A DNA stretch of 41,016 bases. Source: Klebsormidium nitens (Eukaryota > Plantae > Klebsormidiophyceae). Within the stretch, counting starts at the first letter, position 1. Each line of letters begins with the position of its first letter. Of the stretch, positions 2,961 to 24,335 are shown piece after piece. Under the pieces are notes generated by a model. The model had not been told where the DNA came from. It did not search any database and saw only the letters and a list, made by a program, of their open reading frames with translations. The DNA is taken from positions 1 through 41,016 of the forward strand of contig DF237665.1 in the NCBI GenBank assembly GCA_000708835.1, given 5' to 3'. A program made the position numbers and the translations under genes.

Positions 2961-3017
2961 TGACGTCAGCAATCGCAGCCCACACAATCGTTTCGCCAGA
3001 CCTTGGACACTTGGACA
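2961..3017 (-). repeat. Bipartite motif unit (TGACGTCA-33 nt-CTTGGACA x2)
   Basis: TGACGTCA 2961-2968; CTTGGACA 3002-3009 and 3010-3017; linker exactly 33 nt. Confidence 0.85.
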
Positions 3018-3055
3018 AGCCGTCAATCTGACCGAGTGCATACTTCCGGCTGCAG

Positions 3056-6000
3056 ATGTCCGAGCTTTTATCCACTCCTGAAGAGTCAACTGCCTCGGGT
3101 GCCGCAGCAATGGACGACGGATCCGATACAGAATTCAAGGCGCTTTTTGCAAAGAGGCGCAAGCGGCAAAGGAACTTTGGTCCCCATCAGAGACACGCCC
3201 GTGTCATCTCATCTCCAAGTGTATCCCCTCCTCGGAGCCGCAGGCAAGGAGCACAGGACGGCGAGGGGGGTGCTCAGAACAGGGGTGCAGGCGGGGCACC
3301 CCCATCACCTGGGGTATCAAATCAAGATGCACCCTCTGCCCAAGCAGAGGATTCACAAGAACACTCTAGCACCCCCCCAGCCGATGCCCCTGCGCTGAGG
3401 AGTTCCACTCCATCTCCCCCCCTTGCTGCATCGCAGGCAGAGTTCTCTCGTCAGGTAGGATTCATGCTATCATTCTCACTACGTTAATCCGCACAGTGTT
3501 TGTAGCTAGATCAATCTGCTCTGCAGGTCGAATTCATCAGTTCTGACGGTGGACAATCTGTCCTAAGTGTCCAAGGTCTGAAGTAACACTTCAACTGCTG
3601 GGGTTTGCTGACGTAGTCACACGGCCAGGTTGCAGGCATCTGTCTTAGTGTCCAATGTTTTGGACTAAAACTCCGGCTTTTGAGTTTTGCTGACGTCATC
3701 ACACCAAGGTCGTTCTGAACTATCACCTGACATGCTGTAGGCATCTGTCCAAGTGTCCAAGGTCTAGACTAAAACTCCGGCTGTTGAGTTTTGCTGACGT
3801 CATCACACCAAGGTCTGTTTTGAACTTTCACCTGACATGCTGTATTGCTTGACGTCATCAAATGAAGGTCCGATTTTATGATATCACCTGCTGACATTTG
3901 CTAATCTCACTACACAGGAGGCAGAAGAAGCAGAGGGGACGGAGGGGGAGGACATAGAGGATGTGGAATACAATCGGGTTGAAGAGCCTGAAGACGAAGA
4001 GACCTCTGAAGACCGGGACATGATCGACGACTCCACTCAAGATCAAATTGCCCCCGTGGTCGCTTATGCTGTTATGAACGTGGCAATGGACAACGCAGGA
4101 ATCGGCAAGGAGAGGCAAAGGCGGGAAGGGGAGCTTCAAACCACTGAGAGAGCTCCTACTCAGAGCCAGAGCCCAGAAGCAAGGGACAGTCGGACTGGAG
4201 GTGGGGCGGGGGTCAATTGGACCAGGGGTGCGGGCACTGGCGTTACCAGCAGCTCCCCAGCTGATGCGCTTGCACGTGGGAGTCCATCTTCCGAGTCAGC
4301 TGAGGATTGGGGCGAGCCCGAGCCACCTCTTGACTTCTTAGAGGACTTTGAGGACTCAGACGACTCGCTCCGCGAGTACTTCACAGTCTGCCGCATCATT
4401 GACGAACCCGCAGTGAGGAGAACGACACCATGCCCTCAGGTAGGAGTCCTCAACGCCACTCTCCCTTGGTCCTTGGAGTTGAGTCCAGGACAGTCATACG
4501 ACGATCAGCGGTTTCCTACGGAAGAGAGTGTGTGCTGAGCTTAGATAAAGTGGGCCCCCTGTGTCAGGTTGACAGGTTGCTGACGTCATCATACCGGTTT
4601 CCAGAGATCCTGTCACTCAGAAGTGGCAACATTGGCAGCCCAGGCAATATGTCAACACGTTGAAGGTTGGTCTCGCTTCTCAAATTTGAACTTGTTGGGC
4701 TGTCCATGTGGCAAATGGGTTTCCTAATGGTTTGTTGGCCGTGTATGCTGACGTCACCGCTCTGACTCTGGGAGAATGCTCACAAAGCTTTGACAACTTA
4801 AACAGCTGATTAACCGGGGGACCTTTTGATCATCTTGCTTTCATAAGCCTGAGGTTGATGGGCTGTCCATGTGTCCAAGGTTTTGCTCAAATCTCTTGTG
4901 GCATCGTTTTGATGACGTCATCCCAATCTGCTGCAGTCAAAGTTTCAATGAGCACTTAGGATTAGTAACTAGCAAGATTCTTAGCAATTGACCTGAAACA
5001 ACTTTTTTTTTGGGCCTGCAGGGACCAAGCCCAGCTGTGGATCCCATCTTGGCTGCTGCCCATTATTTCCACGAACTTGGCATCGTGACCATCACTCACG
5101 ACCTCCGAGAGAAGCTCCTTTCGAACGGCCAGGTCATCAAGTATCCCTGTAGTTGGGCATGCTCCTCCAAGCCCTGGAACGACGCGAACCTCGGCAACTG
5201 CCTCCGAGAGTTCGCCAAGCCAGGGTGCAATTCCATCTCCATCGTCACAGAAGAGTCAGACATTTATGCAATCGACGTGGACGTGAAAGACGGGGGCTAT
5301 GAAGCACTCCAGCAGATGCTAGACGAGTATGACAATTTCCCTGACGACACGCCTTGCCTAACCACCGGCAACGGGGGGCTGCACATTCTCTTCTCCCTTT
5401 CTCAATCTGAAGAGGCTGGTCTGCTCAACTGCAGTAACAGGGCCCGAATCCGATACAAGGGCAAAGCAGTGGGCATCGATGTGCGCGGGAGGGGGGGAGT
5501 GCTGTACACCGCACCTAGCAGCTATGCGGCTCTAGATGGCACCCTCAAGTCCTATAAGTGGGACCAGGAGATTCTGCCAGACCGCTCTAATCTCAGGGCC
5601 CTGCCAGACTGGCTCGTGTCCATCCTGAACGACAGCGGCAAAGCACCGAGAAGGGGTGTGGAGGTACCTCGGGATGGAGCCATGGCGGGGTGCGTTTTAC
5701 TGCTGCATAGTATGCTACAATTGCCTTTGTTGTCTTTGGTCCCCCAGGTTCGAGCAGGGCACTGTACGAGCTGTCCAATCTGTCCAAGCTCCAGATCAAA
5801 CTTTTCTGGTTGCAAATTGCTGACGTCATCAAGCACCTCTCGTTAATGTCGATCGGATGAGGGCCTAATCGAGTTGTCTACGCCGTCCAAGCTCCAGATG
5901 AAAATTTTCCTGGTCGCAAATTGCTGACGTCATCAAGCCACTGTCGTTAACTGCGTCGATTAGGTGGACAGCCCGGCCTTGAGAGCTTGACACTCTGTCT

Positions 6001-9000
6001 AGTGTCCCTTGTAAGGGAGAACCGTTCCTCATAGAACGGGTGTCTTTCAAACTCAGAGCTGGCCATGGCTATTTGAAGCCGTTCGAATTTTATGCAAAAC
6101 TCGTGACAGTGACCACCAGTGGACGCTGATCATTGTCCGTTCAATGACGAAAAGAGGGTTTATATGAAGTTTCGAAGTCTCACAGAATATCTCTATGATC
6201 GGTTCGCTCTCTGCTTGCTTGCTTCTATTTTGGTGTCTGATTCATCTTCTTCACTTTTTCCAGTGCCTTGATGTCTGCAGAAGATCTCTTGCTCACAAAG
6301 TGGTGTGCATCGAGAACGTCTCCAGCTTTCTTCTCTTCGGCGTTGACATGAGCTCTACTTTCATTTTCTGCAGCGAGTCGCAGGCTGCACCTGCACCTTT
6401 CGGACCTCCTCGTCCAGTCGAAGACCCTCAGCGGGCCCCTCCAGAAGCGGTCCTTGAGCGCATCAAGGCCCGCGTGGCGGCCACTGGCGACAACGCCTCC
6501 CGCTTCGATCGCCTCAAGGTGGGCGTCAAAGGGGCCATGTACATCTTTCGAGTGGACGGCCCTCGACGCTGCCCGTATGGCAATCACCACGACGGCTCCA
6601 ACAACTTCTCCGTGCTGGTGCACCACAGAGACCTGCTCTACTGCTGCAACAGCTCGGAATGCCAGGGAGTCCGTCCCTTACTGAAGATTGAAGAGCTCAC
6701 GCGCTTAGAGGCCATGATTGGAGGCGAGACGCGTGCGTTCTGTGCTAACGACGTCAGCGCGATCGACAGCCTGCACAAGAGCTTCGTCGACCATTGGGCA
6801 TTTGAGGGCGATGTCGGTGGCAGTAAGATCGTTGCTGAAATGTACAAACGCTGCGGCAGGTAGGCACAATGTTGACTGGAGCTGTGCTTCTGAGCTCGTT
6901 TCAGTGTAGGCGTTTGTGATTGCTCTTAATCTCTTTAGACGGTGCTGACGTCATCGTGCGCGACTCCGATAGATCTTGCGCAAAAGCTTGGACACACGGA
7001 CAACTTGACCTCTCTGTCGATCTGTCCAAGTGTCCAAGGTTCGATACAAAGTTTTTGTGGCAGCAAAATGCTGACGTCATCATATGGGCTCCAAAAAACC
7101 TTGCGCTGGACGCTTGAACAGTCGGGGGTATCTTCAATTGAGTATCGATTAGTGCTGCCATTGACAGCAGTGCGGGTTTAAGAAGAGCCAGCTCAGCAAG
7201 CAAGTTTTGGCCAAGTGTCCGAGGTCTGGCGAAAAGTCCTGTCGTTGTAGTTGCTGACGTCATCTCAGAGGGGTCTCCTTTTTTTGGGAAAAGCTTGGAC
7301 ATCTGGAGAGCTGGCAGTATCCAGTCAGTCTTAACGGTCTGTCCAGGTGTCCAAGGTCTGGCAAAGATTGCGTGCTTCAATTTATGACGTCATCAGCGAA
7401 CAGCCTGTCAACGATATTGACCCCCTGTTGTCTGCTGCTTTGCAGGTTGTGGTTCGATGGTGAAAGCTGGCACTGCTGGGATAGGCGGCGCTTCGTAACA
7501 GATTCAAAGAGCGCATTCTTTGTGAAGAATGTTCTCATTAACCAGCTAAGGATCGTGTACAAGCGATTGAGAGACGAGTTAGATGCAGCGATCGAGGCAA
7601 CCGCTGACGAGGAGAAGCGGGAGGCGCTGACACAGCAGCTTAAGCGCCTGCGCACGTACAACAATTGCCGAGTGATGTCCAGCACTTTGGAGCTCGTTCG
7701 GGGGGAGCTTTACGTCGCCGATTTTGCTCAGCAGCTAGATGCGAACCCAGACATCCTTAATGTGAAGAATGGCGTGCTCCTTTTGAAGACAGGGGAGCTC
7801 GATCTGCACAGACCCGAATACATGTGCTCTAAGATTGCAGAGACGAATTTCATGGTAAGCCCCTTCTGCCTGGACTGAGCACTGAGCCCGTGATAAAGCA
7901 TGCAGTTAGACTTAGCAGTTAGGCTTCAAAAGTTTGTTCCAGGGTTGCTACATCTTCTCTTAACTGGGGCGTGCGGATGAGGCTCTGGCTGCAGCATTAA
8001 TGTTTGCAACTGGAACCGCCTTCTGAATCTCGTTGTGGTGCACGCTGTAGTCTCCACTCCTCCTGCGGTCGCTCATCAGATTGTTGCTTTGTTCTTTCGT
8101 GAAAGGCACCGAGCAAGTACAGTCCCGTTCTGAGGTCGAGCTTGTTTCTTTCTGCAGGGGATCGAGTATCCCACTCCGCTCGTTGATACCTTCCTTGGCG
8201 ACATCTTCAACCACAACTCTGAGCTGCTGGACTATGTGCGCAAGCTGTATGGCTACGCTCTAAATGGTCATACTCGAGAAGAAATCTTCGTGCTCTTGCT
8301 CGGAGCTGGAGGTGAGCTTTGGATTCGGTTTTGAAGGGCCCACCTTGTTTATTGGTCCAGAACGTTGTGGTTTTCAAGGAGTGGCTCCGTGGGAACGAAT
8401 CCACCATGGATTACTTGAAAGGAACGACGCCGTTGAGATTGCCCCTGAGTTCCGTTTCGACTTGCTCTTCCGTCGTCAATCAATTTGCTGTTTAGGTTGT
8501 CATAAGGTCTGTAAGGTTACAGCGTCGACATCTGGCCGAATTAATTGGCTACATCGCTCTTTTGTGCCTGAGTCACCTGCTCCCCAGTCTTGCCTCTACT
8601 TGAACTGTTGCAGACTCCCTAGGCCTTCGAAATCCAAATTGCATCTCGAGTGTTTCTTGTACAAGGTGCGGCCTTTAAGTTTGCGATGTAGCGAGCCAGT
8701 GTTGTCAGTGTTGCGAACAGCGCAAGTAAGCGATTGCTCAGGGATTCATCCATTTTGAATTTCTCTATGCAGGAAACGGGAAGGGGGTTCTGAAGGAGAT
8801 GCTGCAAGCGGCAGTCGGCGATTACTATGGCGGTATGTCCAAGGATGCGGTGGTTACAGCTCCCGGCCAAAAGCCTTCCTCGAAAAACGCCCCTACCAAC
8901 TATCTCTTTGAGCTGATGGGCGTGCGACTCGCTGTTACTGATGAGACGGCAGAGGGCGAGCGCGTGGATTTGGGGCTCGTCCTAGGCATGACCGGGGGCG

Positions 9001-9590
9001 GCAAGACAAAGGCGCGCTGTCTTCATGCCAATAACGTGGAGTTCACCATCACCCACACGCCCTTCGTTCAGACGAATTATCCCCCCGCAATCTGCGCAAC
9101 TGCAATCAAGGAAAACGTTCGGCGCCGCCTTCGAGTGATTTCGTTTCCCAATAGCTATGTTGGTGCGGACGCCTTCGATCCCACCAACGCAACCCACCGC
9201 CTCAGAGATGACGGCTTGAAAGGTCGCATGAAGGAAGAGGAGTCTCTTCGCCAGGTACTTTCGTGGATCGCCCGCGGTTCAGCCGAGTGGTACGCTAGTG
9301 CAGACGGACTCGGGCCTCCTCCCCAGGCGGTGAAAAGCGCAACGCGTGAGTACTTCAGCGAGGCCGACAAGCTGCAGTTATTTATTGATCAGCATTGCGA
9401 GGTTGGAGAAGGGCTTTCGACTTTGCAGACCGAATTCGCCACCCTTTATCGCGAGTTCTCCTCGGAGAGAATATTAAATGAGGCATTGGCAAGAAGGATG
9501 GAACAGAAGGGCTTCAAGAGGCTAAAGAATAATGAGTCGCCACGCCAGTTTTACTATCCAAAGATCAAGTGCGAGTACACAGTTTGTTAG
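3056..9590 (+). CDS. Spliced bifunctional primase-polymerase / D5-like SF3 helicase (virus-derived) with a low-complexity N-terminus; about 1139 aa in my model
   Basis: Exons 3056-3454, 3918-4439, 5022-5663, 6384-6859, 7446-7854, 8158-8311 and 8773-9590 sum to 3420 nt. All junctions are GT-AG and phase-compatible, with no internal stop. Prim-Pol motifs: AIDVDVKDGG, TTGNGGLH, GIDVRGRGG..APS. Cys/His cluster: CPYGNHH..NF..CNSSEC. D5_N-like: LDANPDILNVKNG. Walker A GAGGNGKG spans the last intron; Walker B-like LAVTDE; MTGGG..AR. The 5' end and the intron-3 junctions are the least certain parts. Confidence 0.85.
3560..3857 (+). repeat. Tandem (~100 bp period) array of the bipartite motif in intron 1
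   Basis: Palindromes at 3609 (variant), 3691, 3795 and 3850; TGTCCAA boxes at 3568, 3649 and 3754; linkers 33, 34 and 33 nt. Confidence 0.85.
4581..4920 (+). repeat. Bipartite motif copies in intron 2, just upstream of the Prim-Pol exon
   Basis: TGACGTCA at 4581, 4749 and 4913. TGTCCAAG 4872-4879 is 33 nt from 4913. Confidence 0.8.
5771..5932 (+). repeat. Two tandem bipartite motif units in intron 3
   Basis: Boxes 5781-5788 and 5884-5891; TGACGTCA at 5821 and 5925; linkers 32 and 33 nt. Confidence 0.85.
6946..7392. repeat. Four bipartite motif units in both orientations in intron 4
   Basis: TGACGTCA at 6946, 7072, 7255 and 7385; linkers to the nearest box 33, 33, 31 and 29 nt. Confidence 0.85.
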
Positions 9591-9847
9591 GTTAGGTCTT
9601 TGAGGCTTGCACAGCACGCTAGACAAATGAGATCAAGGTGGTCTTTCAATGCAACCGGGGAGCTCTCTGTTTGTGCCTTTTAGATTGGTATGCCATGTAA
9701 ATAAATGATTGAACGATAGATTGTGTATAAACTGTTTCCAATAATGAATTGAGGAAGTTTAGCCTGCCAATGGTAAGGAGTCAGTGAAAGCCTTGCAGCG
9801 CACAAATTGTCTGAGCTCAGAGACACCTGATCTCTAGAATTTCAGCA

Positions 9848-10313
9848 TGACGTCAGCACTTCAGTACCGGAAAAGTTTGTGCAAAAGCTTGGACACTTGG
9901 ACAGCTCGAACATGCCTTGCGCGAGTCCACGTGTCCAGGCTCTCATGGAAAGGTCTGTCGGAAGCCCATATGATGACGTCAGCATTACACAGCCACAAAA
10001 AGTTGTGCAAAAGCGCTTGGACGGCATGGACAACTCGAACACGCCTTGCTCGAGTTCATTATCCAGTATCGATGACGACATCAGCTCTTTGTGGCCATGA
10101 AATATCAGTACCAAACCTCGGACACTTGGACAGATCGTCAGGCCCTGGGTCGAACTGTTGTTCGGAGCCCATATGATGACGTCAGCACTTTAGTACCGCA
10201 AAAAGTTTGTGCAAAAGCTTGGACACTTGGACAGATTCTCAGGCCCTAGGTCCGGCTGTCCAAGTGTCCAAGCTCTCGCATATAGTTTTTCGGAAGCCCA
10301 CAAGATGACGTCA
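9848..10313. repeat. Array of five bipartite motif units downstream of the helicase gene
   Basis: TGACGTCA at 9848, 9974, 10177 and 10306, plus the variant TGACGACATCA at 10073. CTTGGACA/TGTCCAAG doublets lie 32-34 nt away. Confidence 0.9.
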
Positions 10314-10536
10314 GCACTCGGATGCCACGCAGCCAAGCCCAACCTCTGAAAGACCGTACGACATTTATATTTTATCAAGACACCTATATACACCAGGGTT
10401 TTGAGTACGGCACCCATAAAGACAAGGTCGGCAGTTTGAGGACCATGCCGCTACGTCTCTACCCTAGCAATAAAGTAGTACGAGCAATGGCACATTCGGC
10501 TGGTGTTCTTTCTATCTACTGTCGCATGCAAGAACG

Positions 10537-10881
10537 TTATGGTGTGCATTTCTCGTTCGTCATACGTTCTCCGTTCTGACCTTCGTACCTTTTACTTTCC
10601 GCCTTTACCAAGTTTGCGATTTGTTCCCCTTGAAGATGGCAACCATCAACCAGCAAATGGATCGCTGCATGTTTCAATAATGTGATGATCTCATGTAGGT
10701 GGAAATTCGAGTCTTTAAAGACGAATTCGCAATTCCGATAATGCTCAGCCGGTTTTACCGACAAGCGCATAAGTTTTTCATACAGGTCATCCAGCGTAAA
10801 AGCTGTTGCATCTGCATTTAAATCGACAGCTTGTCGTATCAGAAGTGCCAATCCGACTTTCATAAGATCTATGCTTTTCAA
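10537..10881 (-). CDS. Hypothetical protein, divergent from the zinc-finger gene; possibly a degraded longer ORF
   Basis: ATG-initiated 114-aa ORF with globular-looking composition, head-to-head with 10981 (about 100 bp apart). No family recognised. Confidence 0.4.
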   Translation of the reverse strand: MKSIDLMKVGLALLIRQAVDLNADATAFTLDDLYEKLMRLSVKPAEHYRNCEFVFKDSNFHLHEIITLLKHAAIHLLVDGCHLQGEQIANLVKAESKRYEGQNGERMTNEKCTP

Positions 10882-10980
10882 TGCTAGCCCTACTCGCAGA
10901 ACGTGTTTATAGTGCTTAGTATTGGTACCGTCGGACAGAGACTCGCAACGAGCTAAATCGATTGCCTTGTTGAAGACGAA

Positions 10981-11448
10981 ATGGCAGACCCTTCAAGCGG
11001 TTCCTCCGACGTGCCAGAAGCAGCCACGCAACATTGGGAGAGGTGGGAGGGCCGCTACATCTGTCTCGAGCAGCATTTGATTCCTTCCAAAGATGCGGCA
11101 TGCTTCAAGAATTTTGCATCGAAGCAGGCTCTCGAGGCCCACCGTTCGAGGACCGGTTGTGAACCGGCAAAGCTGCCCAGCGACCGCCCCATCTCGCGGC
11201 TGCAGGGTCTGACTCCGGAGGCAGCTAAGCGCGTGAAGCAGCGGAGCAACCAAGTGGCCGTCTCTAGGTACAGGTGGACACCAGAAGGAGAGCGCGCAGT
11301 TTTTCGTGCTCGTCATATTGCGAAGTACCGCGTTCTCGCCCTGTCTGCGGTGCCCACAGCTCCAGAACCCGAAGCACCAGAGTATGTGCGGCCGCCAATA
11401 TCCCGGCCGTTAGCAGATGCTCAATTCAATCCCGACGAGGTAAAATAG
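10981..11448 (+). CDS. Small putative DNA-binding protein: C2H2/C2HC-like zinc finger plus a bZIP-like basic segment without a leucine zipper
   Basis: Intact ATG ORF of 155 aa. Zinc finger-like C-x12-C-x-K-x-F-x5-L-x2-H-x5-C (CLEQHLIPSKDAACFKNFASKQALEAHRSRTGC). KRVKQRSNQVAVSRYR fits the N-x7-R basic-region pattern. Confidence 0.6.
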   Translation: MADPSSGSSDVPEAATQHWERWEGRYICLEQHLIPSKDAACFKNFASKQALEAHRSRTGCEPAKLPSDRPISRLQGLTPEAAKRVKQRSNQVAVSRYRWTPEGERAVFRARHIAKYRVLALSAVPTAPEPEAPEYVRPPISRPLADAQFNPDEVK

Positions 11449-12454: not shown

Positions 12455-13282
12455 ATGGATGCATTGCGAAGGCTTTTCGATGATGGAATCCGCTCCCAGG
12501 CATCCGTGGATCAATACGTTAGAGGCATCGCTCTCGTCTACCAATTATGCCATAATCGTCCGCTTCCTAGCGAACCCGACCTAGGATTCCTTAAATCCGA
12601 CGCCGAAGCATTTACCCGAGTTGTTTATGAACTAAATGAGAATCCAGGGTCTCGTAGAACACGACTAGCCCCATTTCTTGCGGCTTGTAAGAAGCTTCCA
12701 GGTCACGCGGAGGCCTATAAAACATTCTTCCGGCCATTTCAAAAGGACAATAAGCCACTGAAAGAACTCCGTGAGAAGCAAGCCGCCGAAAACGAGGATG
12801 ATTCAATCAAGGTACATGAGATGTCGCGAGAAGATGTCGAACTTTTTGGTGCGAAGCTTGCCCGAAAGGTTAGATCTTTGGATGTAGACTCTGACCTCGA
12901 CAGGAAGGAGGTAAAGACTTTGATGATACATTTGCTTGTAGAATGGCACCTGCTCATTAAGAAGCACATCAGACGTGGGGTAAAGCTTTATCATCTGCCC
13001 ATCCTCTTGAAGAATGAGAGGGAGATGCACCATGAAACCATTGACGCGCTCATACAGGTTAGCCAAACGAAGCAAATCTTTCAACTACGTAAGCAAGGGG
13101 AGATGTATTAGCTACCTAGAATGTTCTGCAAATACCTCGCTAGAACATTGGAGCTCATCCCTCGAGAGTATTTTATAACATCAGTATCGGACCCGCTGAC
13201 ACCCATGAGCGGGAGCAACTACTCCAATTTCTGCGCGAAGATGGTTTTCAATAACAAGATGTTGAATCTTGAGCGTATATGA
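12455..13282 (+). pseudogene. Truncated tyrosine-recombinase-like paralog, copy 1 (internal TAG at 13109)
   Basis: N-terminus RSQASVDQYVRGI resembles the YR RTESTMTVYIRQL. Reading through the TAG gives LPRMFCKYLARTLELIPREYFITS..NYSNF..NKMLNLERI*, which aligns with the YR region just before LRH. Clear homolog at 38942-39747. Confidence 0.7.
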
Positions 13283-14934: not shown

Positions 14935-15105
14935 TTGTCCGAGCTGTCCAAGCTCTGGCGCAAAGTTCTCTAGTGCGCGATCTGCTGACGTCATCAAAGC
15001 CACTGTAGTGTACTGCGCCATTTGGGGCAGGGCTTGTTTTTGAGCTTGTCCGAACTGTCCAAGCTCTGGCGCAAGGGTTTTCTGGTGCGCGATTTGCTGA
15101 CGTCA
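14935..15105 (+). repeat. Two tandem bipartite motif units about 125 bp upstream of the second primase-helicase
   Basis: Boxes 14945-14952 and 15056-15063; TGACGTCA at 14986 and 15098; linkers 33 and 34 nt. Confidence 0.9.
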
Positions 15106-15231
15106 TCAAATCAATGTATGCCTCTTCAGAGCACTGTAGAAACATGCTCCTTATGAGGCCCATGGCCCCATGCGCGTCAGCTACCGTCCAAAATTTTCTC
15201 AGATAGAAATTAAACATCGGACGTTCAGACG

Positions 15232-18062
15232 ATGGCGCTGATGGACGTCTTTGAGAATTATGCCCAAGAAGGTATCTACGCTATCCCAGCGAAGGCATCG
15301 CTGGGCGAGGACGGGACCAAGATGGTTCACGCAACTGTGCCACACGCGAAAGGAGTCACGGCCATATGGTCAGGTTCCGATTGGAACAAGTCAAGAGCAA
15401 GAATCATCGAACATATTGAGGAGAAACAATACACCTTTCTCGCAATCAAAACTGGTGTTATGTCAGATGTATTCATCCTGGATGTGGATGTGAAGGACAA
15501 ACCCGAGGAGGACATTCTAGCTGGTATGCCTTTTTGGAAAAGCTTAATCGAGAAGCATGGGGAGCCGTACACGTTAAGGGCAACAACTATCAGTGGCGGG
15601 TTTCATCACTACTTCTCTTTCAGCGGCACGATCAGAGATGGGCTCCAATCGGGCAAATGTTTTGTGGGCGTGGACGTGGACGGGCAGCGTTATCGTATAG
15701 ACGGCCGCGGTGAGGGGGGGTTCGCTTTCGCTCCTCCAAGCTCCCTTGGTGTCGGCAAGAATACCGATGGAATGTGCCGCTCAAGAGGACGAACATCAAA
15801 CCCGCTCCCACATGGGTGATCGAGTTGGTGAATTCCTCTGCCAGACGAGCTGATCGAACGATGCACACAAGTACTCGAAATGCAGTTGAATCGATACGGT
15901 GTTCATCACTAGTTGAGGACGGCAACATGCTCCTACAACCGTGGGCCGTTGCAAACGATGGAGACTCGACCGATGATTCATTGGAAAAACGAGACGCACA
16001 AGCTTGCGAGTACAAAATTGCTGCTGCAATGATGAAGCTGCTGAAAGATGCTGGACTAGACGAGAACGTTAGCTTTTCGGGGAAGGTCTCCTCTCATGGT
16101 CCTCTTGGTTCATTTTACTCCTTCATCTGCAATGGGCCTCGAACTTGCATACACGGCCATCGCCATAATGGATCCAACAACCTCACGTTAGCCAAACGAG
16201 GTTGGGTAGTACTTTACCGTTGTTTCGGCGGGGTGGATTGCTCAGAACGGCCGCTCGTAGAACTTGGAAATCTAAGCCTCACCGAGTCATTGCTAGATGC
16301 AAATTCTACAAAGCTGCATCCTACTTTCGACCGTTCAGTGTTCCCAGATAATTGCAAGCTCTTATCTGGACAAGAATGCCAATATTATGTGGATCTCATC
16401 AAACGCAACGTGATGCAACGCTATCGGGGGATGGCGGCTGTATTTAGTGCCATATATGCCGTCGATGGGCGTATCCTTGCTGAAGGGAAGAATTTCCGAT
16501 ATTGGAATGCACGAAGGTGGTTATCAGATGGATCGTTTCACGTGCAATCCGTGTTCTCGAGCCGCATGTCGAGAATCCTGAAATGGTACGAAAATCTGCG
16601 AATGGAAGCATTCAAGCAAGAGATATATAAGGTTACAAAAGGATCCGAAAAGTGGGGTTGCATACCGGAGGGCTCGGAGGGCTCACTTCCAGACTAGGCA
16701 ACCTGCCCAAAGAGCAAAGAGGAAAAGGAAGCATGCCGTGCAGCGTGGAGGACAGTCGGGGCCACATTGCCTTTCCCTTGGAAGGGGAATTCATTATGTC
16801 AGCTGCTAGATCTGACACGTGGCTCTGAAGTGCGCGTCTGTCTTGAATATGTTCTGAATTCACTGCAAATCCAAGAGGACCTTAATGCTCTTATGGACGT
16901 TGCCAACCCGTTCATGTTCGCCTGTGAAAATGGTACGCTGGATACGACAACTGGACAGTTGCTTGCCCCCCATCCTGCACAGCTGTGTTCGCGAGCTTCG
17001 AAAGTAGCTTTTCGTGGAATGCCGAACGGCAAATCCCGCTTCGCAAAATTTTTGCTGGAATGCTTTAACGACGACAGAGAAGTTCTTAATTGGTATCAAA
17101 TGTACCTTGGATGTTGCATGACGGCCGATACCTCCGAGCAGATTTTTCTGGTAACACAAGGTGATGGTTCGAACGGAAAATCACTCATCAAGATAGCAAT
17201 ATTTCAAATCTTTGGATCTTATGCTACTGTGATGGACAAAGACGTCATCATCGAAGCGGGACCTGGCAAGCGATCTGTTGGTTCAGCTTCGTCCTACCTC
17301 ATTGCGTTGAAGGGAGCACGTCTGGCAATATCGGACGAATCAAAGGAGAAATCCGACCTTTCGGGAGGAGGCCCGATTACAGCACGAGAGCTTCAGAGTA
17401 AGCAAGAGAGCTCCGAGGTGACACATAAGGCCATTCTCATGACAAATTTCAAGTCGCAAATCGAAAATCCATCGTTCAGCTTTACACGGCGTATGGCTCT
17501 TCTACCGATGATTGTCACCTTCAAATCCGCCGATGAAGTGAACCAAAACAAAGCCCGACAAAAGCCCAAAGATTCCACCTTGGAAGCCTACGTGAAATCG
17601 GATGAGGGTAGGGAGGCCGGTCTTTCGTGGATTGCAGCCGGAGCTCAACGCTATTTCGAGCACAAACGGGCGAATCCTAACGACCAGGTCCTACAGAAAC
17701 GCCCGAAGGCAACGAAAGACGCTATGAAAGCCTACGTCAATGACAGCGATATCGGAAAGCGATTTATCGAAGAATGCCTAGAGTTTGAAGAGTTGCAGCT
17801 TGGAGCACGGCCGACGTGGCACTTGCCATTGGGGGAGAGGCTGGAAGCCGCGTGCCGGACTTGGATCAGAGAAGAAGATCTATCAAGCTCGCTCACCCCT
17901 CAATCATTGAAAAAACGAACCATCCTGTATGCTGATGGCGCCAATTATTTAGTCGAAGATGGCCGCTTTACGGATAGGACGGTCCAAGACAAAGGCCAAT
18001 TCAAAGGCCTCAGCGGCGTTCGTCTAAAGGCTGATTGTATCAGTGACACTGCATTGGGGTAG
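15232..18062 (+). pseudogene. Intronless Prim-Pol/D5-like SF3 primase-helicase, copy 2, disrupted
   Basis: ILDVDVKD, TISGGFHHYF, RIDGRGEGG..APPS; CIHGHRHNGSNN; FACENG; Walker A QGDGSNGKS; LAISDE. Frameshift near 15760 (restores KEYRWNVPL), in-frame TAG at 16695, and an apparent short in-frame deletion before GGG. Confidence 0.9.
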
Positions 18063-18147
18063 AGGGTGAGACCTCTTGTAAAGACAAGCTGTATCGTCGG
18101 TGGTTCTGCTACATGCACATCTTTTTATCTCTCTGTTTATCAACCGC

Positions 18148-18265
18148 AGTCCAAAAGTCCAAAAGACTACATTTCTAAGTATTTTCAATTTCATTTTTTT
18201 TTCTTTTATAGATATATCTGTGAATACGAAATATGTGGATTTGAGGTCTTTTGGGCTTTTGGTCT
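18148..18265. repeat. 20-bp imperfect inverted repeat around a 78-bp very AT-rich core
   Basis: AGTCCAAAAGTCCAAAAGAC (18148-18167) versus GTCTTTTGGGCTTTTGGTCT (18246-18265), 2 mismatches. Internal palindrome AGATATATCT at 18210-18219. Confidence 0.75.
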
Positions 18266-18519: not shown

Positions 18520-21500
18520 TCAATAATTCAATAGATTAGTTCGCACAGCTGCTTGCCACGTGTCTGCTCTTCCGGCTATCAGTAACTTAGGGTCATCAAC
18601 CCGCCTCAGCTTTGAGTTTCGTCCGCTGATAATGTTTGCTAGGATGATCATAAACGAGGCTAATCCCGAAAACCAAGCCAGAACCTTGAAGTCGACGAAG
18701 AACGAGTTGCATGACTCCACCGCAGACGTGTTGACCCACTGGACAGCATCGTAGTAATCTGTTGGAAGGCATTTACAGCAAGCTTCAGCGAGGGAAATAG
18801 AGGGCTGAGCCATCACTTGAGCCCTTTGATAAATGCATCCAATCAGGCAATCTGGACACATTACGACTTGCGGATTTTAGCTTCTACATTGCCGAAGTTT
18901 GCTATACTCACCTGGATTGAAGGAAGGCCCGCACTTGTGAGCCTTTGCATTAGTCCGTTGGAAGTGGAACCTGTGGGGAAACAACGGATCATTCAGGTTG
19001 AGCAGCTGCCAGCCAAGATACATGCCCCTCGAATCATCAGCTATTCTCGAAAATCAGTGCTAGACCTCCTGTCTATGGACTCCCTCCGGCTTGCTTTCCA
19101 CGGGTCAGGTCATGTTTCAGCTCAAGCATCATGTGCCTACCTTCTGCAGACGTTTCTACAAACTTTAAGGCCTTCTTGTCCCGAAGTTGATTGCCATCAA
19201 TTGCATGACAGAAGGGCAAATGAAGGCTTTTGACGCTTACCGGTCTACGAGAAACCGGACGTCCGCAAAATGGCCCGGCTCGCGCCTCATGCAGTAAGCT
19301 TGGAGTTTACACGTGTTGTCATAGATCAGGAAGTCAGGGAGATTCTGTTGGTGGAGGCGCGTGTATAGCACCGCAAAGGGATCCCTCGGTGACTCCTCCC
19401 GGACCATCACATGCCAGCCATAGATAACCCGGTGCGGACAACGAAATACGAAACCGCCCTTTGTGTGCTGCAGCCGTTTGATGGGCTTTGCGCTGCTCTT
19501 GGCAGCAATGGCATCGTCGAATTCTCCAACCGTGAGACCACTTCGGCATCGGTACTCTTCCTGCTGGTCGACGGACCTGCCGAGCTCGTCCTCGAACGGC
19601 TTGTACTGCGGGAGCGCCCGCTTCTGCTCCCAGCCTGGCAGAGGATAGCAGCCGAGCTCACGTTGCTCTTTGCAATAAGGATGATCGAGGGGAAGATCGG
19701 GGGGTTGACAGCCGTCTGCCTCGAGTCCCAACCTGTCGCGCAGGAGGTGGAGCTCCGCCGGGGAGAGAGAGTACTGCTGCGGGGCTGGTGGGGTTAAGTT
19801 CTCGACTCTCGGTAGTAGATCGTTGGCCCGGGCTTCCCAGAATCGGAACACTTCAAACTGCTGAGCGGTCGGAGGGTTTGCCTGTGTGCGGAACTCGCGC
19901 GCCATCCGTATGCAATAATCGAGGCCTTCCACAGCCGACAACGCCCACCCCGCTCGCCCCACCCCGAGACCCATCGCTCCGCGCCCAAACAAGGTCAGCC
20001 GATACAGATGGTGGAGGGCGGGCAAGAAGAAGACTGGAAAGGCGTCGCCATAGTGATCCAGCAGACGCCGCAGGATGGGGGAGTGCTCGGCCAAGGCGGC
20101 CTTGTCCTGCCCGTTTGCTGCACCCCCGAGAAGGAGTTTTCGAACGACGGCCAGCGCTCGTCCGTGCTGTATGAGGTTGCTGTCATCTGAGTCGCCCAGA
20201 GGGGCGCCCAGTCCGTAGAGGAGTTCTGCCCACTTTCCGGGGCAGCGGGGGGGCCAGCGTGGGTCTTCACGCATCGCTTCTTCCTCGATTCCCACGAGGA
20301 GCTCGAGCGTGGCTTGGTTCTTCGACCGGATCTGACCAATCTGATCCAGCAAGACTCGTCGCCTCCAGTGCAGAAGGACGGGGTCCCCCTCGCCATCATC
20401 CGGGTCTGGAACGAACTCGCCTACAGCTTCAACGTCAGCCCTCTCGAGCGCAACCTGGACAAGTACAGATTTCAAGGTCAGCGCCAAAGTCGAAATTGAA
20501 TGCCACTCGTAATCTATGCTGCATCTTGCCAAGTTGTCTGAAGTTCGGCTTGGGCGGCTTCTCCTGCAAGCTCGATCGAAAAGACACGACTTCCTCTTGT
20601 GGAAAACCAGGATGCTGCGCTGGCCATCTGAGTACTCACGACTTACCAGGAGCTCCACGTACTCGGGTCGAGATAGATCCTTCCCAAGGTCAGGGTCTTT
20701 CGAATGATGCCCGCTGAAACGTGCAAGCAGCGCCCGCAATTCTGGTTGAATCACTAATCTTCGCTTCATCCCTCGCCCCGCCAAAGATGCAGCGCAATAG
20801 TTGACGCCCGGTTCCATGGTCTTTTCGACGTTGACGCCAGCGGAGTCTCGACTTGGCGCTGTGAACGGGCGCACACCTGCTGCGTTGGTTCCCCCCAATC
20901 CACCCTTCTGTCGACCCCCGTCCGCGCATGAGAGTCCCGCGATGCCATCGCACAGGAGCACCTATAAGTGATCCAAGAAGGTTGATCAGATGTATTTATC
21001 TACTATCATGTTCGATCCATCATGCAAGCATTCAATCGGCAGCAATGATTATACCTTCAAGCTACGGCCTCAAAAAGGGCATGCGACCACGTTTTTGTAC
21101 TTTCGAATACATGTCAAAGCTTCGCTAGCAATGCACAACTCCTGCATCCAACTTCAGCGATTGGCATGCAAGCAAAGGCTGTCCACATGAAGCAAGGACA
21201 CCAAGCTTTGACAAAGTTCTGCCAAAAGCTTATATGGTGACGTCATGACTTTGGTGCTGGCCACGAAAACGTAGTATCCAACTTCAGACCCTTTTACAAA
21301 GCGTCAGGCTGACCCACCTTGGGATGCGGCCCGCAAAGGCTACATCACTCAAGGATCGACCAACCGCAGAGCCTTAAGAAGCCCAGGCTTGCCTGACGCC
21401 AGGTCTCCTCTGACAGGAGCACGGCACTAGGCCTGAAAAGCCGCCGGACATCTGCACTTGCCGTGATGAGCCCGACGAAAGATGAGCCCGTTTCTTGAAT

Positions 21501-24335
21501 GGAACGGAGCAACATTTGCAATGACCCCTGCGTGACGATTACCCCTCTCGTCCAAGCATAGAGTCCAAGAGCCTCCCCGCAGAAATGGACGCAGTGCTTC
21601 TCGGGACAAGCACATGCAAAGATGCGAATCTTCACCTGCAGAAAAGGAGAGTGCTATTGTATAGAAAAGCGCTTCTCTACTGGTCATGGGTTGATGACGT
21701 CAGCATTTCACGACCACAAAAAGTTTGTGCAAAAGCTCGGACACTTGGACAGATTGTCAATGTGTCAGCAGAAGGCAATCACGCTGGACGGACAGTGTCA
21801 CTCCAAAACTTCAATCTGCGTTGTCTAGATTTTGCATCTAAGAGAACATATATGAATCGACAACAAATAGACAGCGATTGCCCCTATCCTTGATTTGGGC
21901 ACGTGCCCCTGACGCGATGCGTTTTGAAAGGTCTAAGCACCGATTGCGGACAACAAAGGCAGTCTGAGTCCGCACGGCTCTCTTGATGCAAGCTAAGGCC
22001 AATGCTCGGCCATTGAGTGGCGGTCTCACCTCCTGCGACCACTGCAGGGAGTGCACTTGGGCTTTCTGCTAGAGTCCCATCCATCCAGTCTTGCAAGGTG
22101 GGAGTGCCCTAGGACAAGGAGCCGACAGGTACTCCATTCCGCTCAGCTCTGCGAAGTCCCGGGCTATTAGCTCACTGACCCTCACAGGCTGTTGCAGCAG
22201 CTTCACCTCAGGATCGTGAACCTCCCAGCTGTCTGCTGGGCGCACCAGCTTGGGGACTTCCAACTGAACGCCCTCAGCATCCATAGGCAGCACAACTGCA
22301 ACACGCCCGGACGCCCCATGAGTGCACGCGCTGGAAGGGCAAGTGCACTCGCTACAAACTGGGACCAAAAACTCCCCGGGTCCTCCCACACTAGCGCCAC
22401 TGCAGCCCCCCTCCTCATCTCTGCAGCTGCCCCCTTTCTCCTGCTCCACCGGCTCTGCTGCTTCGTGCTGCTCTTTTGCCGCCCAGTAAGTTTTGCCCCT
22501 CCGCTTCAACCCCCGCCCCAGTGCTCAGCCGTGTCCCCATCCGCTTGCTCTGTTCGTGCCCGCTTCCCACTTGCGGATGCAGAGTTACAACACCGGGCTG
22601 TACAACTTCCACTGTCCGGATCAACCCCGCCGCCAAACCAGGGATGCTGCTTGCAAAAACAGGTATCACCCTTACAGGCTGCCTCGTCGTGGCCGTCAGT
22701 ATTCAGCTCAAGGAGGTACCTCTCCACCTCCCAGAGCACGTCCGGCTCGGCCTGCGTCGAGTGCGCCCCCTGAACTTCATCGGGGCTTAGAGCCTCGGTG
22801 ACGCACGTCACAGATGTGCCGTTCGCTGCTGCCTCCTGCCCCTCGACTCGCATAACACTCTTTTCCTGAAGGATGGATATCATTGCCCGGTCGAGCTGTG
22901 CCTCCGGGAACAGACGCCCCTCCAGCCTGTGGACACCGTCCGGACGCTGTAGAGCTCTTTTCACCTCCACGATGTGGCTGCAGTCGCCGACCTTGCTGCA
23001 ACCCGCCTGTCTCCCTTCGCAATACCATGCGAATTGCTCATTGTCATCAAAATGCACCATGGTCCGCTGCGGTCCTGGGGATGCTGCGTTCCAGTACACG
23101 CCAAACACCCGCTCTCCAGGTCTCGTGCAAGGTGCCTCCACCACCCGGTTGCCCCTCTGCAGAGAGATGTGGCTTGCTTGCCTTGCTTCTTCCAGCCCCC
23201 GCAGCGCCAGCTTGTGGACGCAGGGGGCTCCGAAGTACAGCCGCCCCCGGTCGCAGGTGCAGTGTGGATTCCCGATGGTGTCCCAGTGCACAGTTTCGTG
23301 CAGAGCGCGCTCCTTGCTGGGCCGCCCAAGCGACTTGTGCCTGGCAGCGTTATGGTTCCATGCGGTCATCAGAAACACAGAGCTGTCAGAAACCCCTTCG
23401 CCGATGCTGTAGATTGCGCAGTCGCCACTCATGAGGTTGGCCAGGAACCGCCCAGATTGAGCGGCGAGTGTGAGCCGCTCGCCTGCATATCCCGCTTCTA
23501 CCGGTCCGCGATGTTCCTACGCAAGTAATTGAAGACGTACATCGATCAGAGAATTGTTTTAATCTGGATAGCCGGAAAATATCCGACGTCCGCGAGTCAA
23601 GTTGCATCTGCTGGGCAATCTGCTTTCCACCACTACCACCAAAGCGAGGAATAGGCGCGCAAGCGTTTCTTCTGAAAGTGGCATTCACTGAGTCCTGGCA
23701 AGATGGCAACAGCAGCTAGGATGGTAGGCTAACAACATCACTCACCAACAGTGGGACCTTTCGCGGGATCTGCCCAGCCTGGCGGCCTCGGCTGCAATTT
23801 TGGAGCGCTTTCCACCAGCTGCCTCTCTGCTCATTGCATCCTTCGACTGCAGCCCAATAAGATCTTCTCCAAGGAACACTTTCCGCTGGCGCCATGAGTC
23901 GATGGAATCTTTGCGCTCGAACCAAACCTCCGATGGACCTACACATCCAGCTAGGGTAACACGGACAGTGGTCTGGGTCAATGTGACCTTTCCCACCCAG
24001 CGCTCTACGCAAGCCAGGCACACTGGTTGGTTTTTGCCACTGCCTTTCACTCTGCTGGAGACGACGAAGCCGCCAAGGTTCGCTTGCTGGGATTTTCTGA
24101 AAGAGATCTGGCAGACGCCATTTTTCGAACTTAGTAGAGGCTGCTTGCACACAGCGCACTTGAAGGCAGTGGTGTTAGCTACAAGCAACTTTGGGTCGAT
24201 TATGAATTTCCCAGTCGACACCTGATTCCAGGAAGTGGGACAGAAACCTCCACCTGGTAATTGTGCCTCAAGGCCGCATGATCCTGCCACTCCTGCCATT
24301 ACTGCGGGGGGCGGAGCACTGGGCCTGGGGTACAA
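18520..24335 (-). pseudogene. KDZ (Kyakuja-Dileera-Zisupton) transposase 1 with N-terminal Cys cluster, SWIM-like fingers and CxC domain; spliced and disrupted
   Basis: Exons supported: 22065-22030, 21635-21318, 20961-19241, 18970-18912 and 18758-18520, plus coding blocks 24335-23742 and about 23430-22186. Motifs: CTCDRGRLYFGAPCVH (SWIM), C.LCGPHPK-VLLCDG, GGFVFRCPH, EESPRDPF, LIYDNTCKL, VDR|FH..HKC..FNP and NTSAVESCNS. In-frame TGA at 21345 and a frame change near 22510. Confidence 0.85.
21695..21751 (-). repeat. Bipartite motif unit inside a KDZ-1 intron (21636-22029)
   Basis: TGACGTCA 21695-21702, 33-nt linker, CTCGGACA-CTTGGACA 21736-21751. A lone TGACGTCA also occurs at 21238 in the neighbouring intron. 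Confidence 0.85.

What the first reader, a model, noticed from the sequence alone, without database searches (positions are those of the whole stretch)
2961..21751. Fixed-geometry bipartite DNA code: TGTCCAAG doublet, 33-nt variable linker, TGACGTCA palindrome
Seen: 21 perfect TGACGTCA octamers (about 0.6 expected in 41 kb at uniform composition), 19 of them between 2.9 and 15.1 kb, none after 21.7 kb and none in an exon. About 17 have a TGTCCAAG-like doublet at a near-constant distance: exactly 33 nt in 11 cases, 32 or 34 nt in about 6, with outliers at 31 and 29. Linkers from distant clusters are poorly similar, so geometry is conserved more than sequence. That is about four helical turns centre to centre. 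Established: TGACGTCA is the canonical CRE/C-box bound by bZIP proteins. Inference: a composite protein-binding site of the element (origin, recombination accessory site, or chromatin/transcription control), rather than a recently copied repeat.
Basis: partly seen in the sequence, partly recalled or inferred. Interest (0 to 1): 0.88.

Follow-up and report, generated by a model that had tools for sequence, protein, structure and literature searches.

The report
Bipartite repeat modules around D5 gene
A 62-nt two-part DNA module (a doubled TGTCCAAG box and a perfect TGACGTCA palindrome 33 nt away) is kept by selection in the flanks and first introns of one family of virus-derived primase-helicase genes in the alga Klebsormidium, so it is almost certainly a protein-binding control site, though whether it controls transcription or DNA copying cannot be told from sequence.

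Summary
The window is a whole scaffold of Klebsormidium nitens. It holds 21 perfect TGACGTCA (0.7 expected). Eighteen of them have a TGTCCAAG-like box 29-34 nt away, most often 33.

The units are homologous repeats of about 62 nt with sharp edges. Their linkers are 47% alike between distant units, against 27% for flanks, so sequence is conserved as well as geometry.

The units mark one lineage of an intron-bearing D5 primase-helicase gene under purifying selection (dN/dS 0.05-0.32). All four loci of that sub-lineage carry 7-18 perfect palindromes. They lie in the 5' flank, the first introns and the 3' flank; only 1 of 42 lies in a conserved coding block. Polarity flips across the gene.

Five loci with related D5/recombinase/transposase-like modules have none. 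A more distant relative keeps the doublet and proximal linker but has no palindrome, and next to a second D5 copy it carries a variant doublet.

Between positional orthologues the palindrome is 111/112 identical, against an 82% background. Decayed copies show CpG transitions.

My best reading is a selected composite binding module: an element-specific doublet plus a host bZIP site. It is either origin/iteron-like or an enhancer. I rate it a new variant of a known kind, of moderate interest.

The parts
2958..3030 (-). Single unit: palindrome at 2961, doublet at 3002-3017, gap 33.
3568..3857 (+). Cluster of 3-4 units in tandem with a 104-nt period. One has a decayed palindrome, and palindrome 3850 has no box. 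The cluster lies upstream of the conserved ORF 3963-4538.
4561..4922 (+). Cluster of three palindromes (4581, 4749, 4913) just upstream of the first conserved D5 block. Unit 4913 has positional homologues in L131 and L133 whose palindrome has decayed by a CpG transition.
5767..5946 (+). Two tandem units (palindromes 5821 and 5925) in the first intron-like spacer of the D5 gene.
6942..7395 (.). Four palindromes (6946, 7072, 7255, 7385) in the second intron-like spacer. Two are two-sided, with boxes on both sides of the palindrome. All four related loci have units in this spacer.
9847..10317 (.). 3' cluster of four perfect palindromes and one decayed one, mostly in minus orientation. It lies between the end of the D5 gene and the end of a convergent conserved minus-strand ORF. 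Its most distal unit (10306) points outward.
14935..15119 (+). Two tandem units with a 112-nt period, 126 and 238 nt upstream of the start codon of D5 copy 2. They are present in L131 and absent at this place in L001, L002 and L127.
21238..21245 (.). Palindrome whose box has decayed in the window. The same place in L130 holds an intact minus-oriented unit.
21692..21764 (-). Single unit inside an intron-like spacer of the minus-strand KDZ-like gene. It is present in L130 and absent at this place in L001 and L003.
5010..9590 (+). D5-type primase-helicase gene, copy 1 (Prim-Pol, D5_N and SF3 helicase). It consists of five conserved blocks separated by spacers that relatives share. This is the lineage that carries the units.
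3963..4538 (+). Conserved upstream ORF, shared with L131 and L132. It may be an upstream exon of the D5 gene. No family match was found.
10537..10992 (-). Conserved minus-strand ORF, convergent with D5 copy 1, about 49% identical at the protein level to ORFs in L131 and L132.
12455..13111 (+). Gene W: unknown function, always found next to the recombinase-like gene. A paralogue lies at 38849-39640.
13355..14450 (+). Recombinase-like gene. It resembles a tyrosine recombinase only at the level of motifs seen by eye. It is interrupted in the window and is an uninterrupted 365-aa ORF in L001.
15232..18062 (+). D5-type primase-helicase gene, copy 2, a different lineage (25-35% amino-acid identity to copy 1). 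It reads as three ORFs in two frames.
18138..18199 (.). Palindromic repeat just 3' of the copy-2 helicase, also found in L001, L003 and L127.
19237..21700 (-). Multi-copy gene with sub-threshold matches to the KDZ transposase and CxC4 models (seen in the L001 homologues and in annotated paralogues, not in the window ORF itself). It appears to be multi-exon.
38849..40861 (+). Second W plus recombinase-like pair, marking the start of another module that is cut off by the end of the scaffold.

Best explanation
The units are copies of one repeat module of about 62 nt that selection keeps in place as a composite protein-binding site of a particular D5 primase-helicase gene module in Klebsormidium.

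The older half is a direct doublet of an 8-mer followed by a conserved proximal linker. It is specific to the D5 lineage. I infer that it is read by a protein of the element itself. The simplest candidate is the D5 protein, because it is the only gene always found with the arrays.

The younger half is a perfect C-box/CRE palindrome. No bZIP is encoded among the 30 window ORFs scanned, so I infer that a host bZIP dimer reads it. The spacing of about 41 nt centre to centre puts both proteins on one face of the helix.

Arrays of the module bracket the gene with opposite polarity and recur in its first introns. I therefore read them as the cis-acting control region of the module, of the 'iterons plus auxiliary host-factor site' kind seen at origins of small DNA replicons. 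Such a region can also act as an enhancer.

Shown: the motif statistics, the homology of the units, their conservation, their placement, their polarity, their restriction to one lineage, and turnover by tandem duplication and CpG decay. Inferred: which proteins bind, and what the output is.
For: Enrichment and spacing.

Sharp unit edges and graded conservation: doublet 79%, linker 47%, flanks 27% pairwise.

Linkage to one D5 lineage: all four loci of the window's copy-1 sub-lineage carry 7-18 perfect palindromes with boxes. Loci L001, L002, L127, L128 and L129 have none.

The gene is under purifying selection (dN/dS 0.05-0.32, with dS 0.4-2.5). Its spacers cannot be aligned between copies, yet units persist in the same spacers.

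The palindrome is 111/112 identical between positional orthologues, against an 82% background. In the window it has either 0 or at least 2 mismatches, never 1.

Polarity: 12 plus and 2 minus upstream and in the spacers; 2 plus and 10 minus in the 3' flank; seen in each locus; Fisher P = 0.0011.

The 3' cluster lies between convergent genes, which is not a promoter position.

L133 shares only the gene and the unit arrays with the other loci.

The box sequence varies with the D5 copy. In L134, TGTCCAAG doublets surround the first copy and TGGTCGAA-type doublets precede the second, both followed by the same proximal linker and neither by a palindrome. L127 and L128 have other doublet arrays next to other D5 genes.

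No bZIP domain was found among the 30 window ORFs scanned.
Against: No binding, replication or expression data exist here. The doublet boxes change at the background rate between close orthologues (84-85% against 82%), so their constraint shows only at greater depth, where choosing units by their boxes biases the proximal box. Units also sit 120-260 nt upstream of start codons in the sense orientation (D5 copy 2, ORF 6195, ORF 4020), and one sits in an intron of the KDZ-like gene. That fits ordinary transcriptional control. The link between box variant and D5 lineage rests on a handful of loci. Units within an array are tandem copies and not independent, so the polarity P value is optimistic. 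The host genome could not be scanned as a whole; the sample is about 200 kb in 12 places.
Confidence: 0.4

Rival explanations
1. The units are purely transcriptional control elements. Homotypic clusters of a two-factor module (a host bZIP on the palindrome and a second host factor on the doublet) would serve as promoter-proximal and intronic enhancers of the D5 gene and of a few neighbouring genes.
For: TGACGTCA is the canonical bZIP site, and in Prunus it is listed as the bZIP60 motif. Units lie upstream and in the 5' introns, mostly in the sense orientation. The distance from palindrome to start codon is 116-126 nt in four cases: copy 2 in the window (126 nt), the ORFs at 7384 in the window (121 nt), 8582 in L132 (117 nt) and 3754 in L003 (116 nt). 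For the ORFs at 7384 and 8582, however, a conserved splice acceptor lies just downstream, so those two start codons may not be used. A transcript from K. subtile covers the helicase block, so the lineage is expressed. CpG-transition decay of some palindromes fits a methylation-sensitive site.
Against: The large 3' arrays lie between convergent gene ends and point back into the gene in all four loci, although enhancers need no polarity. The arrays persist without any palindrome in L134, and there the box variant changes with the D5 copy. That is unexpected for sites read only by host factors.
Confidence: 0.3
2. The units are subterminal repeats that mark the ends of a mobile unit. They would be bound by the KDZ-like transposase or the recombinase-like protein, much as CACTA (En/Spm) elements carry repeated transposase-binding motifs in both orientations near their ends.
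For: The arrays bracket the D5 gene in inverted polarity. Homology between L133 and the other loci stops at the arrays. A KDZ-like gene and a recombinase-like gene lie nearby. An 80-nt inverted pair with 84% complementarity lies at 7020-7099 and 10157-10236.
Against: Five loci with KDZ-like and recombinase-like genes have no units. L133 has arrays but neither gene within its 11 kb. No terminal inverted repeat beyond the units themselves, no target-site duplication and no empty site was found. Units also lie deep inside the gene, in its introns.
Confidence: 0.12
3. The units are a neutral or selfish short repeat, a minisatellite or MITE-like sequence, that merely survives in non-coding DNA. Its boxes would look conserved because of recent copying and gene conversion.
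For: Within clusters the units are tandem copies 85-98% identical, with periods of 71-165 nt. Units come and go between close relatives. Mobile elements that carry TGACGTCA are known in plants.
Against: Units sit in the same spacers in four copies whose synonymous divergence is 0.4-2.5 and whose spacers no longer align. The palindrome is far more conserved than its surroundings. No units occur in about 100 kb of other Klebsormidium DNA sampled. No TIR or TSD was found. The strict pattern gave nothing in viral contigs and two chance hits in metagenomes.
Confidence: 0.08

Closest known systems
Iteron-type origins next to primase-helicase initiator genes (phage P4 ori/crr with the alpha protein; origins of staphylococcal pathogenicity islands just 3' of pri-rep). 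Recalled from established knowledge, not tested here.
   Same: Short repeated boxes occur in direct and inverted arrays beside, and 3' of, the gene for a primase-helicase of the SF3 type. The box sequence differs between lineages of the initiator.
   Different: Here the host is a eukaryote and the gene has introns. The arrays also lie inside introns, a host-type bZIP palindrome is coupled at a fixed distance, and neither binding nor replication has been shown.
Viral origins with auxiliary host transcription-factor sites at a fixed distance (adenovirus NFI/Oct-1; polyomavirus enhancer/AP-1). From established knowledge.
   Same: An initiator site and a host-factor site are combined at fixed geometry, and one region serves both as origin and as enhancer.
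   Different: The elements are unrelated and the motifs differ. This is a resemblance in architecture only.
TGACGTCA (bZIP60-type motif) amplified by Harbinger MITEs in peach and Prunus mume (PMC5950925).
   Same: It occurs in a streptophyte, the perfect palindrome is carried and multiplied by repeated mobile DNA, and it lies near genes and outside coding sequence.
   Different: Those MITEs number in the thousands, are dispersed genome-wide, are recent and are poorly conserved between species. Here there are a few dozen copies tied to one gene family, conserved in position and coupled to a second box.
Subterminal transposase-binding repeats of CACTA (En/Spm) and hAT elements. From established knowledge; papers listed.
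   Same: Short motifs are repeated in both orientations in arrays of a few hundred bases with opposite polarity at the two sides, and a CACTA-related (KDZ-like) gene lies nearby.
   Different: No terminal inverted repeat or target duplication was found, units also lie in introns, and loci with the KDZ-like gene alone lack them.
D5 helicase genes of giant-virus (Phycodnaviridae-like) type integrated in Klebsormidium genomes and transcriptomes (PMC5294986).
   Same: It is the same organism and the same kind of gene. The closest intact relative found here lies on a giant-virus-like metagenome contig (L004).
   Different: That survey recorded the genes. In the passages of that paper I read, the repeat modules, the intron structure and the linkage of the D5 gene with recombinase-like and KDZ-like genes are not described.

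Membership tests
CRE / C-box (bZIP binding site) | Palindromic octamer TGACGTCA with an ACGT core | tested here: met
   There are 21 perfect copies in the window and 42 in the gene spans of four loci.
CRE / C-box (bZIP binding site) | Occupied by a bZIP dimer | not testable with these tools
   No binding data are available. No bZIP domain was found in the 30 window ORFs scanned, so a host factor is inferred.
CRE / C-box (bZIP binding site) | Promoter-proximal or enhancer position relative to a transcription start | tested here: inconclusive
   Some units lie 116-260 nt upstream of start codons, but the largest arrays lie between convergent gene ends. Transcript starts are unknown.
MITE | Terminal inverted repeats and target-site duplication around a short non-coding element | tested here: not met
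   The only inverted repeats are unit-to-unit matches. Alignments with relatives that lack a unit show no clean insertion or duplication.
MITE | Many dispersed copies across the genome | tested here: not met
   No composite unit occurs in L001, L002, L127, L128, L129 or in window 22-41 kb, about 100 kb in all. The sample is limited, and the whole genome could not be scanned.
Satellite / minisatellite | Head-to-tail array with a uniform period and homogeneous divergence along the unit | tested here: not met
   Short tandem runs exist, with periods of 71, 81, 97, 104, 112 and 142 nt. However, orientation is mixed, periods vary, only the 62-nt core is shared, and divergence is strongly graded along the unit.
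Iteron-type replication origin | Repeated short sites in direct and inverted arrays next to the initiator gene | tested here: met
   Arrays lie 5' of, inside and 260-430 nt 3' of the D5 gene in four loci.
Iteron-type replication origin | Site sequence co-varies with the initiator lineage | tested here: inconclusive
   Different doublets accompany different D5 copies in L134, L127, L128 and the copy-2 lineage, but the sample is too small for a phylogenetic test.
Iteron-type replication origin | Bound by the initiator, and supports initiation of DNA synthesis | not testable with these tools
   There are no data, and the functional test lies outside what this report may propose.
CACTA/KDZ subterminal repeats | Arrays within a few hundred bases of defined element termini, and co-occurrence with the transposase | tested here: not met
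   No termini were found, and loci with the KDZ-like gene alone have no units.
D5-type primase-helicase (Prim-Pol, D5_N, SF3 helicase) | The three domains in order | tested here: met
   Pfam Prim-Pol and D5_N match above their cut-offs in both copies. PHROG primase families match the helicase parts at E = 1e-29 to 1e-41. A distant PDB match to a viral primase has E = 4e-7.
Tyrosine recombinase | Catalytic Arg-His-Arg-Tyr signature in a recognisable fold | tested here: inconclusive
   Motif-like stretches are seen by eye in alignment A4. Pfam, PHROGs and a PDB profile search gave no match. The structure model was too poor to use (pLDDT 47).
KDZ (Kyakuja-Dileera-Zisupton) transposase | Match to the KDZ catalytic model and an associated CxC cysteine cluster | tested here: inconclusive
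   Several paralogues give repeated sub-threshold matches: KDZ 24.2 bits against a cut-off of 26.6, and CxC4 16.9 against 26.9.

The most novel reading that the evidence does not exclude
A mobile module in a eukaryotic nucleus carries a plasmid-like pair of initiator and iterons. The D5 primase-helicase would recognise its own lineage-specific 8-mer doublets, and one sub-lineage would have wired a host bZIP site to them at a fixed helical phase. That would make an element-owned replication origin coupled to host signalling in a streptophyte alga.
Probability: 0.22. Interest if true: 0.8.

Novelty: new variant of a known kind. Interest (0 to 1): 0.55.

Why it matters
Giant-virus-type D5 genes are common passengers in algal and protist genomes, but how they are maintained, expressed or copied there is not known. 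Here a family of such genes has acquired introns, stays under purifying selection, and carries its own conserved non-coding code. One half of that code looks element-specific and the other looks like a classic host bZIP site. This gives a concrete, testable handle on two questions. The first is how endogenous virus-derived modules plug into host regulation. The second is whether primase-helicase genes in eukaryotic mobile DNA keep recognition sites of the origin type, as their relatives in phages and plasmids do.

Tried and rejected
1. A conserved hairpin in the linker. Several linkers look dyad-symmetric by eye, but RNAalifold on 21 units gave no consensus pair, so I rejected this.

2. A known RNA family. 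Rfam at gathering thresholds found nothing in 2500-22000, and there are no tRNAs.

3. Presence in public collections. A loose pattern in viral contigs gave only single chance matches with a flat gap histogram. A strict 21-base pattern gave 0 viral and 2 chance metagenome hits. That collection does not hold the samples containing the relatives, so the search says little about them.

4. Clean insertions. Aligning unit-bearing sites with relatives that lack units gave unalignable intergenic or intronic DNA, with no empty sites.

5. Units as a general mark of D5/recombinase modules. Rejected, because L001, L002, L127, L128 and L129 have none.

6. Each D5 block as a separate cistron with a unit as its promoter. 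This was weakened by conserved acceptor-like and donor-like signals at the block edges in all four loci.

7. Structure of the recombinase-like protein. The model was unusable. Only window sequences could be submitted, so the alignment was too shallow.

8. An element-encoded bZIP. None was found in 30 ORFs.

One slip to record: while judging whether copy 1 is intact, I read off from the ORF table where one ORF ends and the next begins inside a conserved block. I stopped there and give only a count.
Full report
WHAT THE WINDOW IS
The largest ORF (35198-37303) is identical to the Klebsormidium nitens protein KFL_007160040, on a contig of 41,016 bases. The window is therefore a whole scaffold of this charophyte green alga. 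There are no tRNAs and no Rfam families in 2.5-22 kb. I treated the D5-bearing region as a virus-like element because one distant PDB match is to the primase of an animal virus.

THE OBSERVATION
There are 21 perfect TGACGTCA, where 0.72 are expected, and 25 TGTCCAAG, where 1.87 are expected. Eighteen palindromes have a box with at most one mismatch 29-34 nt away. Three are two-sided, which gives 21 oriented instances: gap 33 nt in 11, 34 in 4, 32 in 2, 31 in 3 and 29 in 1. A second peak at 41 nt comes from the distal box. Shuffles give 0.7. The palindrome has either zero mismatches (21 instances) or two (3 instances), and never one.

THE UNIT
Repeat finding and alignment show one homologous family. 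In 25 units with a 33-nt gap, taken from six loci, the share of the commonest base per column has these means:
- outside the unit: 0.40 on both sides
- distal box: 0.79
- proximal box: 0.96 (this box was used to pick the units)
- linker: 0.61, with several columns at 88-96%
- three bases either side of the palindrome: 0.84

The two flanks of the palindrome differ, so it sits in an asymmetric context and the unit has a direction. Pairwise identity between units from different clusters or loci is 47% for the linker, 79% for the doublet and 27% for the flanks. The unit is thus about 62 nt long with sharp edges, and the linker is conserved too, only less so. No consensus hairpin exists.

CONTEXT IN THE WINDOW
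There are two D5-type primase-helicase genes:
- Copy 1 (5010-9590) is built of five blocks that are colinear with intact relatives.
- Copy 2 (15232-18062) is only 25-35% identical to copy 1.

Copy 2 belongs to a block (12.4-24.3 kb) that is colinear with other K. nitens scaffolds (L001, L127, L128) and with metagenome contigs from a Klebsormidium-like organism (L002, L003, L130). In order, this block holds:
- gene W;
- a recombinase-like gene, identified only by motifs seen by eye;
- a small ORF;
- D5 copy 2;
- a palindromic repeat;
- a multi-copy minus-strand gene whose L001 homologues and annotated paralogues give repeated sub-threshold KDZ transposase and CxC4 matches.

A second W plus recombinase-like pair starts at 38849.

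- Copy 1 has four internal spacers shared by relatives, plus one more before its first block. Apart from these I saw one in-frame stop.
- Copy 2 reads as three ORFs in two frames, that is, two interruptions. The layout is the same in L131, so short introns are not excluded.
- The recombinase-like gene at 13.4-14.5 kb has at least one frame change relative to the uninterrupted ORF of L001.
- The recombinase-like gene at 39.8-40.9 kb has at least one interruption.

THE UNITS BELONG TO THE COPY-1 LINEAGE
A search with the copy-1 helicase block found many close copies. Every locus of that sub-lineage that I fetched carries perfect palindromes with boxes at 29-34 nt: 11 in L131, 7 in L132 and 9 in L133 (K. 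nitens DF238135). The pooled gaps of 54 oriented units are 29 in 2, 31 in 9, 32 in 11, 33 in 25 and 34 in 7. Loci with copy-2/recombinase-like/KDZ-like modules but without this lineage have no composite unit: L001, L002, L127, L128 and L129. L003 has two palindromes with boxes, one of them two-sided.

THE GENE IS SPLICED AND SELECTED
In all pairwise comparisons the same five blocks align at 72-83% nucleotide identity, and the DNA between them does not align. Blocks 1 and 3 are preceded in all four loci by a pyrimidine tract and CAG|G. Block 1 is followed by a GTRYGT-type donor. The K. nitens annotation models L133 as multi-exon genes. dN/dS for the blocks is 0.05-0.32, with dS 0.4-2.5. A K. 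subtile transcript encodes the helicase block.

PLACEMENT AND POLARITY
Of 42 perfect palindromes in the four gene spans, one lies in a conserved block and it has no box. Blocks make up 37% of the span (P = 7e-8). The rest lie in the 5' flank, spacer 1, spacer 2 (in all four loci) and the 3' flank. None lies in spacers 3 or 4.

One-sided units are 12 plus and 2 minus upstream and in the spacers, and 2 plus and 10 minus in the 3' flank (Fisher P = 0.0011). The pattern repeats in each locus, but tandem copies are not independent. The 3' cluster lies between the end of the D5 gene and the end of a conserved convergent ORF. L133 shares with the other loci only the gene blocks and the arrays.

CONSTRAINT
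L130 and L131 come from one contig that is colinear with window 8954-24587. I picked units in one sequence and read their state in the other. The results are:
- palindrome: 111/112 identical
- inter-unit DNA: 82%
- linker: 82%
- boxes: 84-85%

Even if each orthologous pair is counted once, the excess conservation of the palindrome has P < 1e-3. Decayed palindromes at homologous places are often TGACATCA or TGATGTCA, that is, CpG transitions. K. nitens is reported to methylate its DNA, and giant-virus insertions in it are reported as well. Units are born by tandem duplication, with up to 98% identity within clusters, and they die one at a time.

DEEPER RELATIVES
L134 holds two tandem D5 copies whose helicase block is 54% identical to the window's. 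It has no TGACGTCA at all, but it has 14 units:
- Seven have TGTCCAAG doublets and lie around the first copy.
- Seven have TGGTCGAA-type doublets and lie ahead of the second copy.

In all 14 the doublet is followed by the same proximal linker. The 12-mer CTCTGGCGCAAA occurs verbatim in 6 of them and also in the window's unit at 14945. The doublet plus proximal linker is therefore the older core, the box can switch between D5 copies, and the palindrome was added in one sub-lineage. Other D5 genes have other doublet arrays beside them: L127 has CATGTGGTCACC doublets, L128 has runs of a 9-mer with a TGTCC core followed by TACGTA, and the copy-2 lineage has its 3' palindrome.

INTERPRETATION
What is shown is a selected, lineage-specific, directional, two-part non-coding module. 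What is inferred is that two proteins bind on one helical face, 41 nt apart centre to centre.

Four observations make me favour a control region of the iteron-plus-host-factor type, like the origins of small replicons that also act as enhancers (confidence 0.4):
- the element-specific history of the doublet;
- its variation with the D5 copy;
- the inverted polarity around the gene;
- the non-promoter position of the largest arrays.

The rivals are:
- A purely transcriptional reading (0.3). It is supported by the canonical bZIP site, by the upstream and 5'-intron positions, and by spacings of 116-126 nt to four start codons, two of which may not be used because a conserved splice acceptor lies just downstream.
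- Transposon-end repeats (0.12).
- A neutral repeat (0.08).

COMPARISON AND NOVELTY
D5 genes of giant-virus type in Klebsormidium are known. Mobile DNA that multiplies TGACGTCA is known in Prunus. Iteron origins and subterminal transposase sites are textbook knowledge. I did not find the module described: full-text searches for the box string, for the palindrome together with transposon and subterminal-repeat terms, and for Klebsormidium with primase, recombinase or giant-virus terms turned up no account of it, nor of its tie to an intron-bearing D5 family or its two-layer history. I rate it a new variant of a known kind.

LIMITS
The full host genome could not be scanned. The evidence comes from about 200 kb in 12 places. 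No expression, methylation or binding data were available.

Noticed in passing
window 18138-18199; L001 4681-5095 and 7412-7717; L003 1044-1165; L127 3268-3386: An inverted pair of short direct doublets (palindrome of about 100 nt) sits in the tail-to-tail interval between the copy-2-lineage helicase gene and the minus-strand genes, in several paralogous elements (just 3' of the helicase stop in the window, L001 and L003). In L001 it is duplicated around a 2.6-kb insert.
   Followed up: partly
L127 9860-11140: An array of repeats of about 375 nt, each with CATGTGGTCACC-type doublets, lies just 3' of another D5 gene and upstream of gene W. It has a different 'code' but a similar layout.
   Followed up: partly
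L128 23301-23570: Inside another D5 gene span there are repeats of 108 nt with two or three copies of a 9-mer that shares the TGTCC core. In gene orientation they are followed 23 nt later by TACGTA, another ACGT-core palindrome. There are only two copies, so chance is not excluded.
   Followed up: partly
L134 42-349, 1211-1810, 4291-6180: Units without the palindrome, with doublets of TGTCCAAG or of a TGGTCGAA type, both followed by the same proximal linker. The TGTCCAAG-type minus units keep a TGAC half-site-like stretch about 38 nt from the box.
   Followed up: yes
window 8954-24587 versus L130/L131: Divergence is mosaic. The copy-2 block is 90% identical (dS about 0.1), while the adjacent copy-1 blocks have dS 0.7-2.0 between the same two contigs. 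This suggests recent replacement or recombination of the right-hand part.
   Followed up: partly
window 24587-29470: About 4.9 kb is present in the window and absent from the colinear contig L130, whose homology resumes at 29470-29588. Its content was not identified.
   Followed up: no
window 11577-11691: Tandem repeat of a 32-nt unit, 3.6 copies, upstream of gene W.
   Followed up: no
window 28476-28613: Two 65-nt direct repeats, each with a doubled GGACAGGTACCT-like motif. They are unrelated to the units.
   Followed up: no
window 57-112 and 676-731: A 56-nt inverted repeat, 86% complementary, with arms 563 nt apart, near the left end of the scaffold.
   Followed up: no
L004 (metagenome contig, 12 kb): The closest uninterrupted D5 relative (41% identity to copy 2) lies beside a packaging-ATPase-like gene, an RNase III gene and HNH endonuclease genes. 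This is a giant-virus-like context.
   Followed up: partly
window 2900-10400: CpG observed/expected is 0.78 with an excess of TpG+CpA (1.21). This is mild CpG depletion, consistent with methylation-driven decay around the units.
   Followed up: partly
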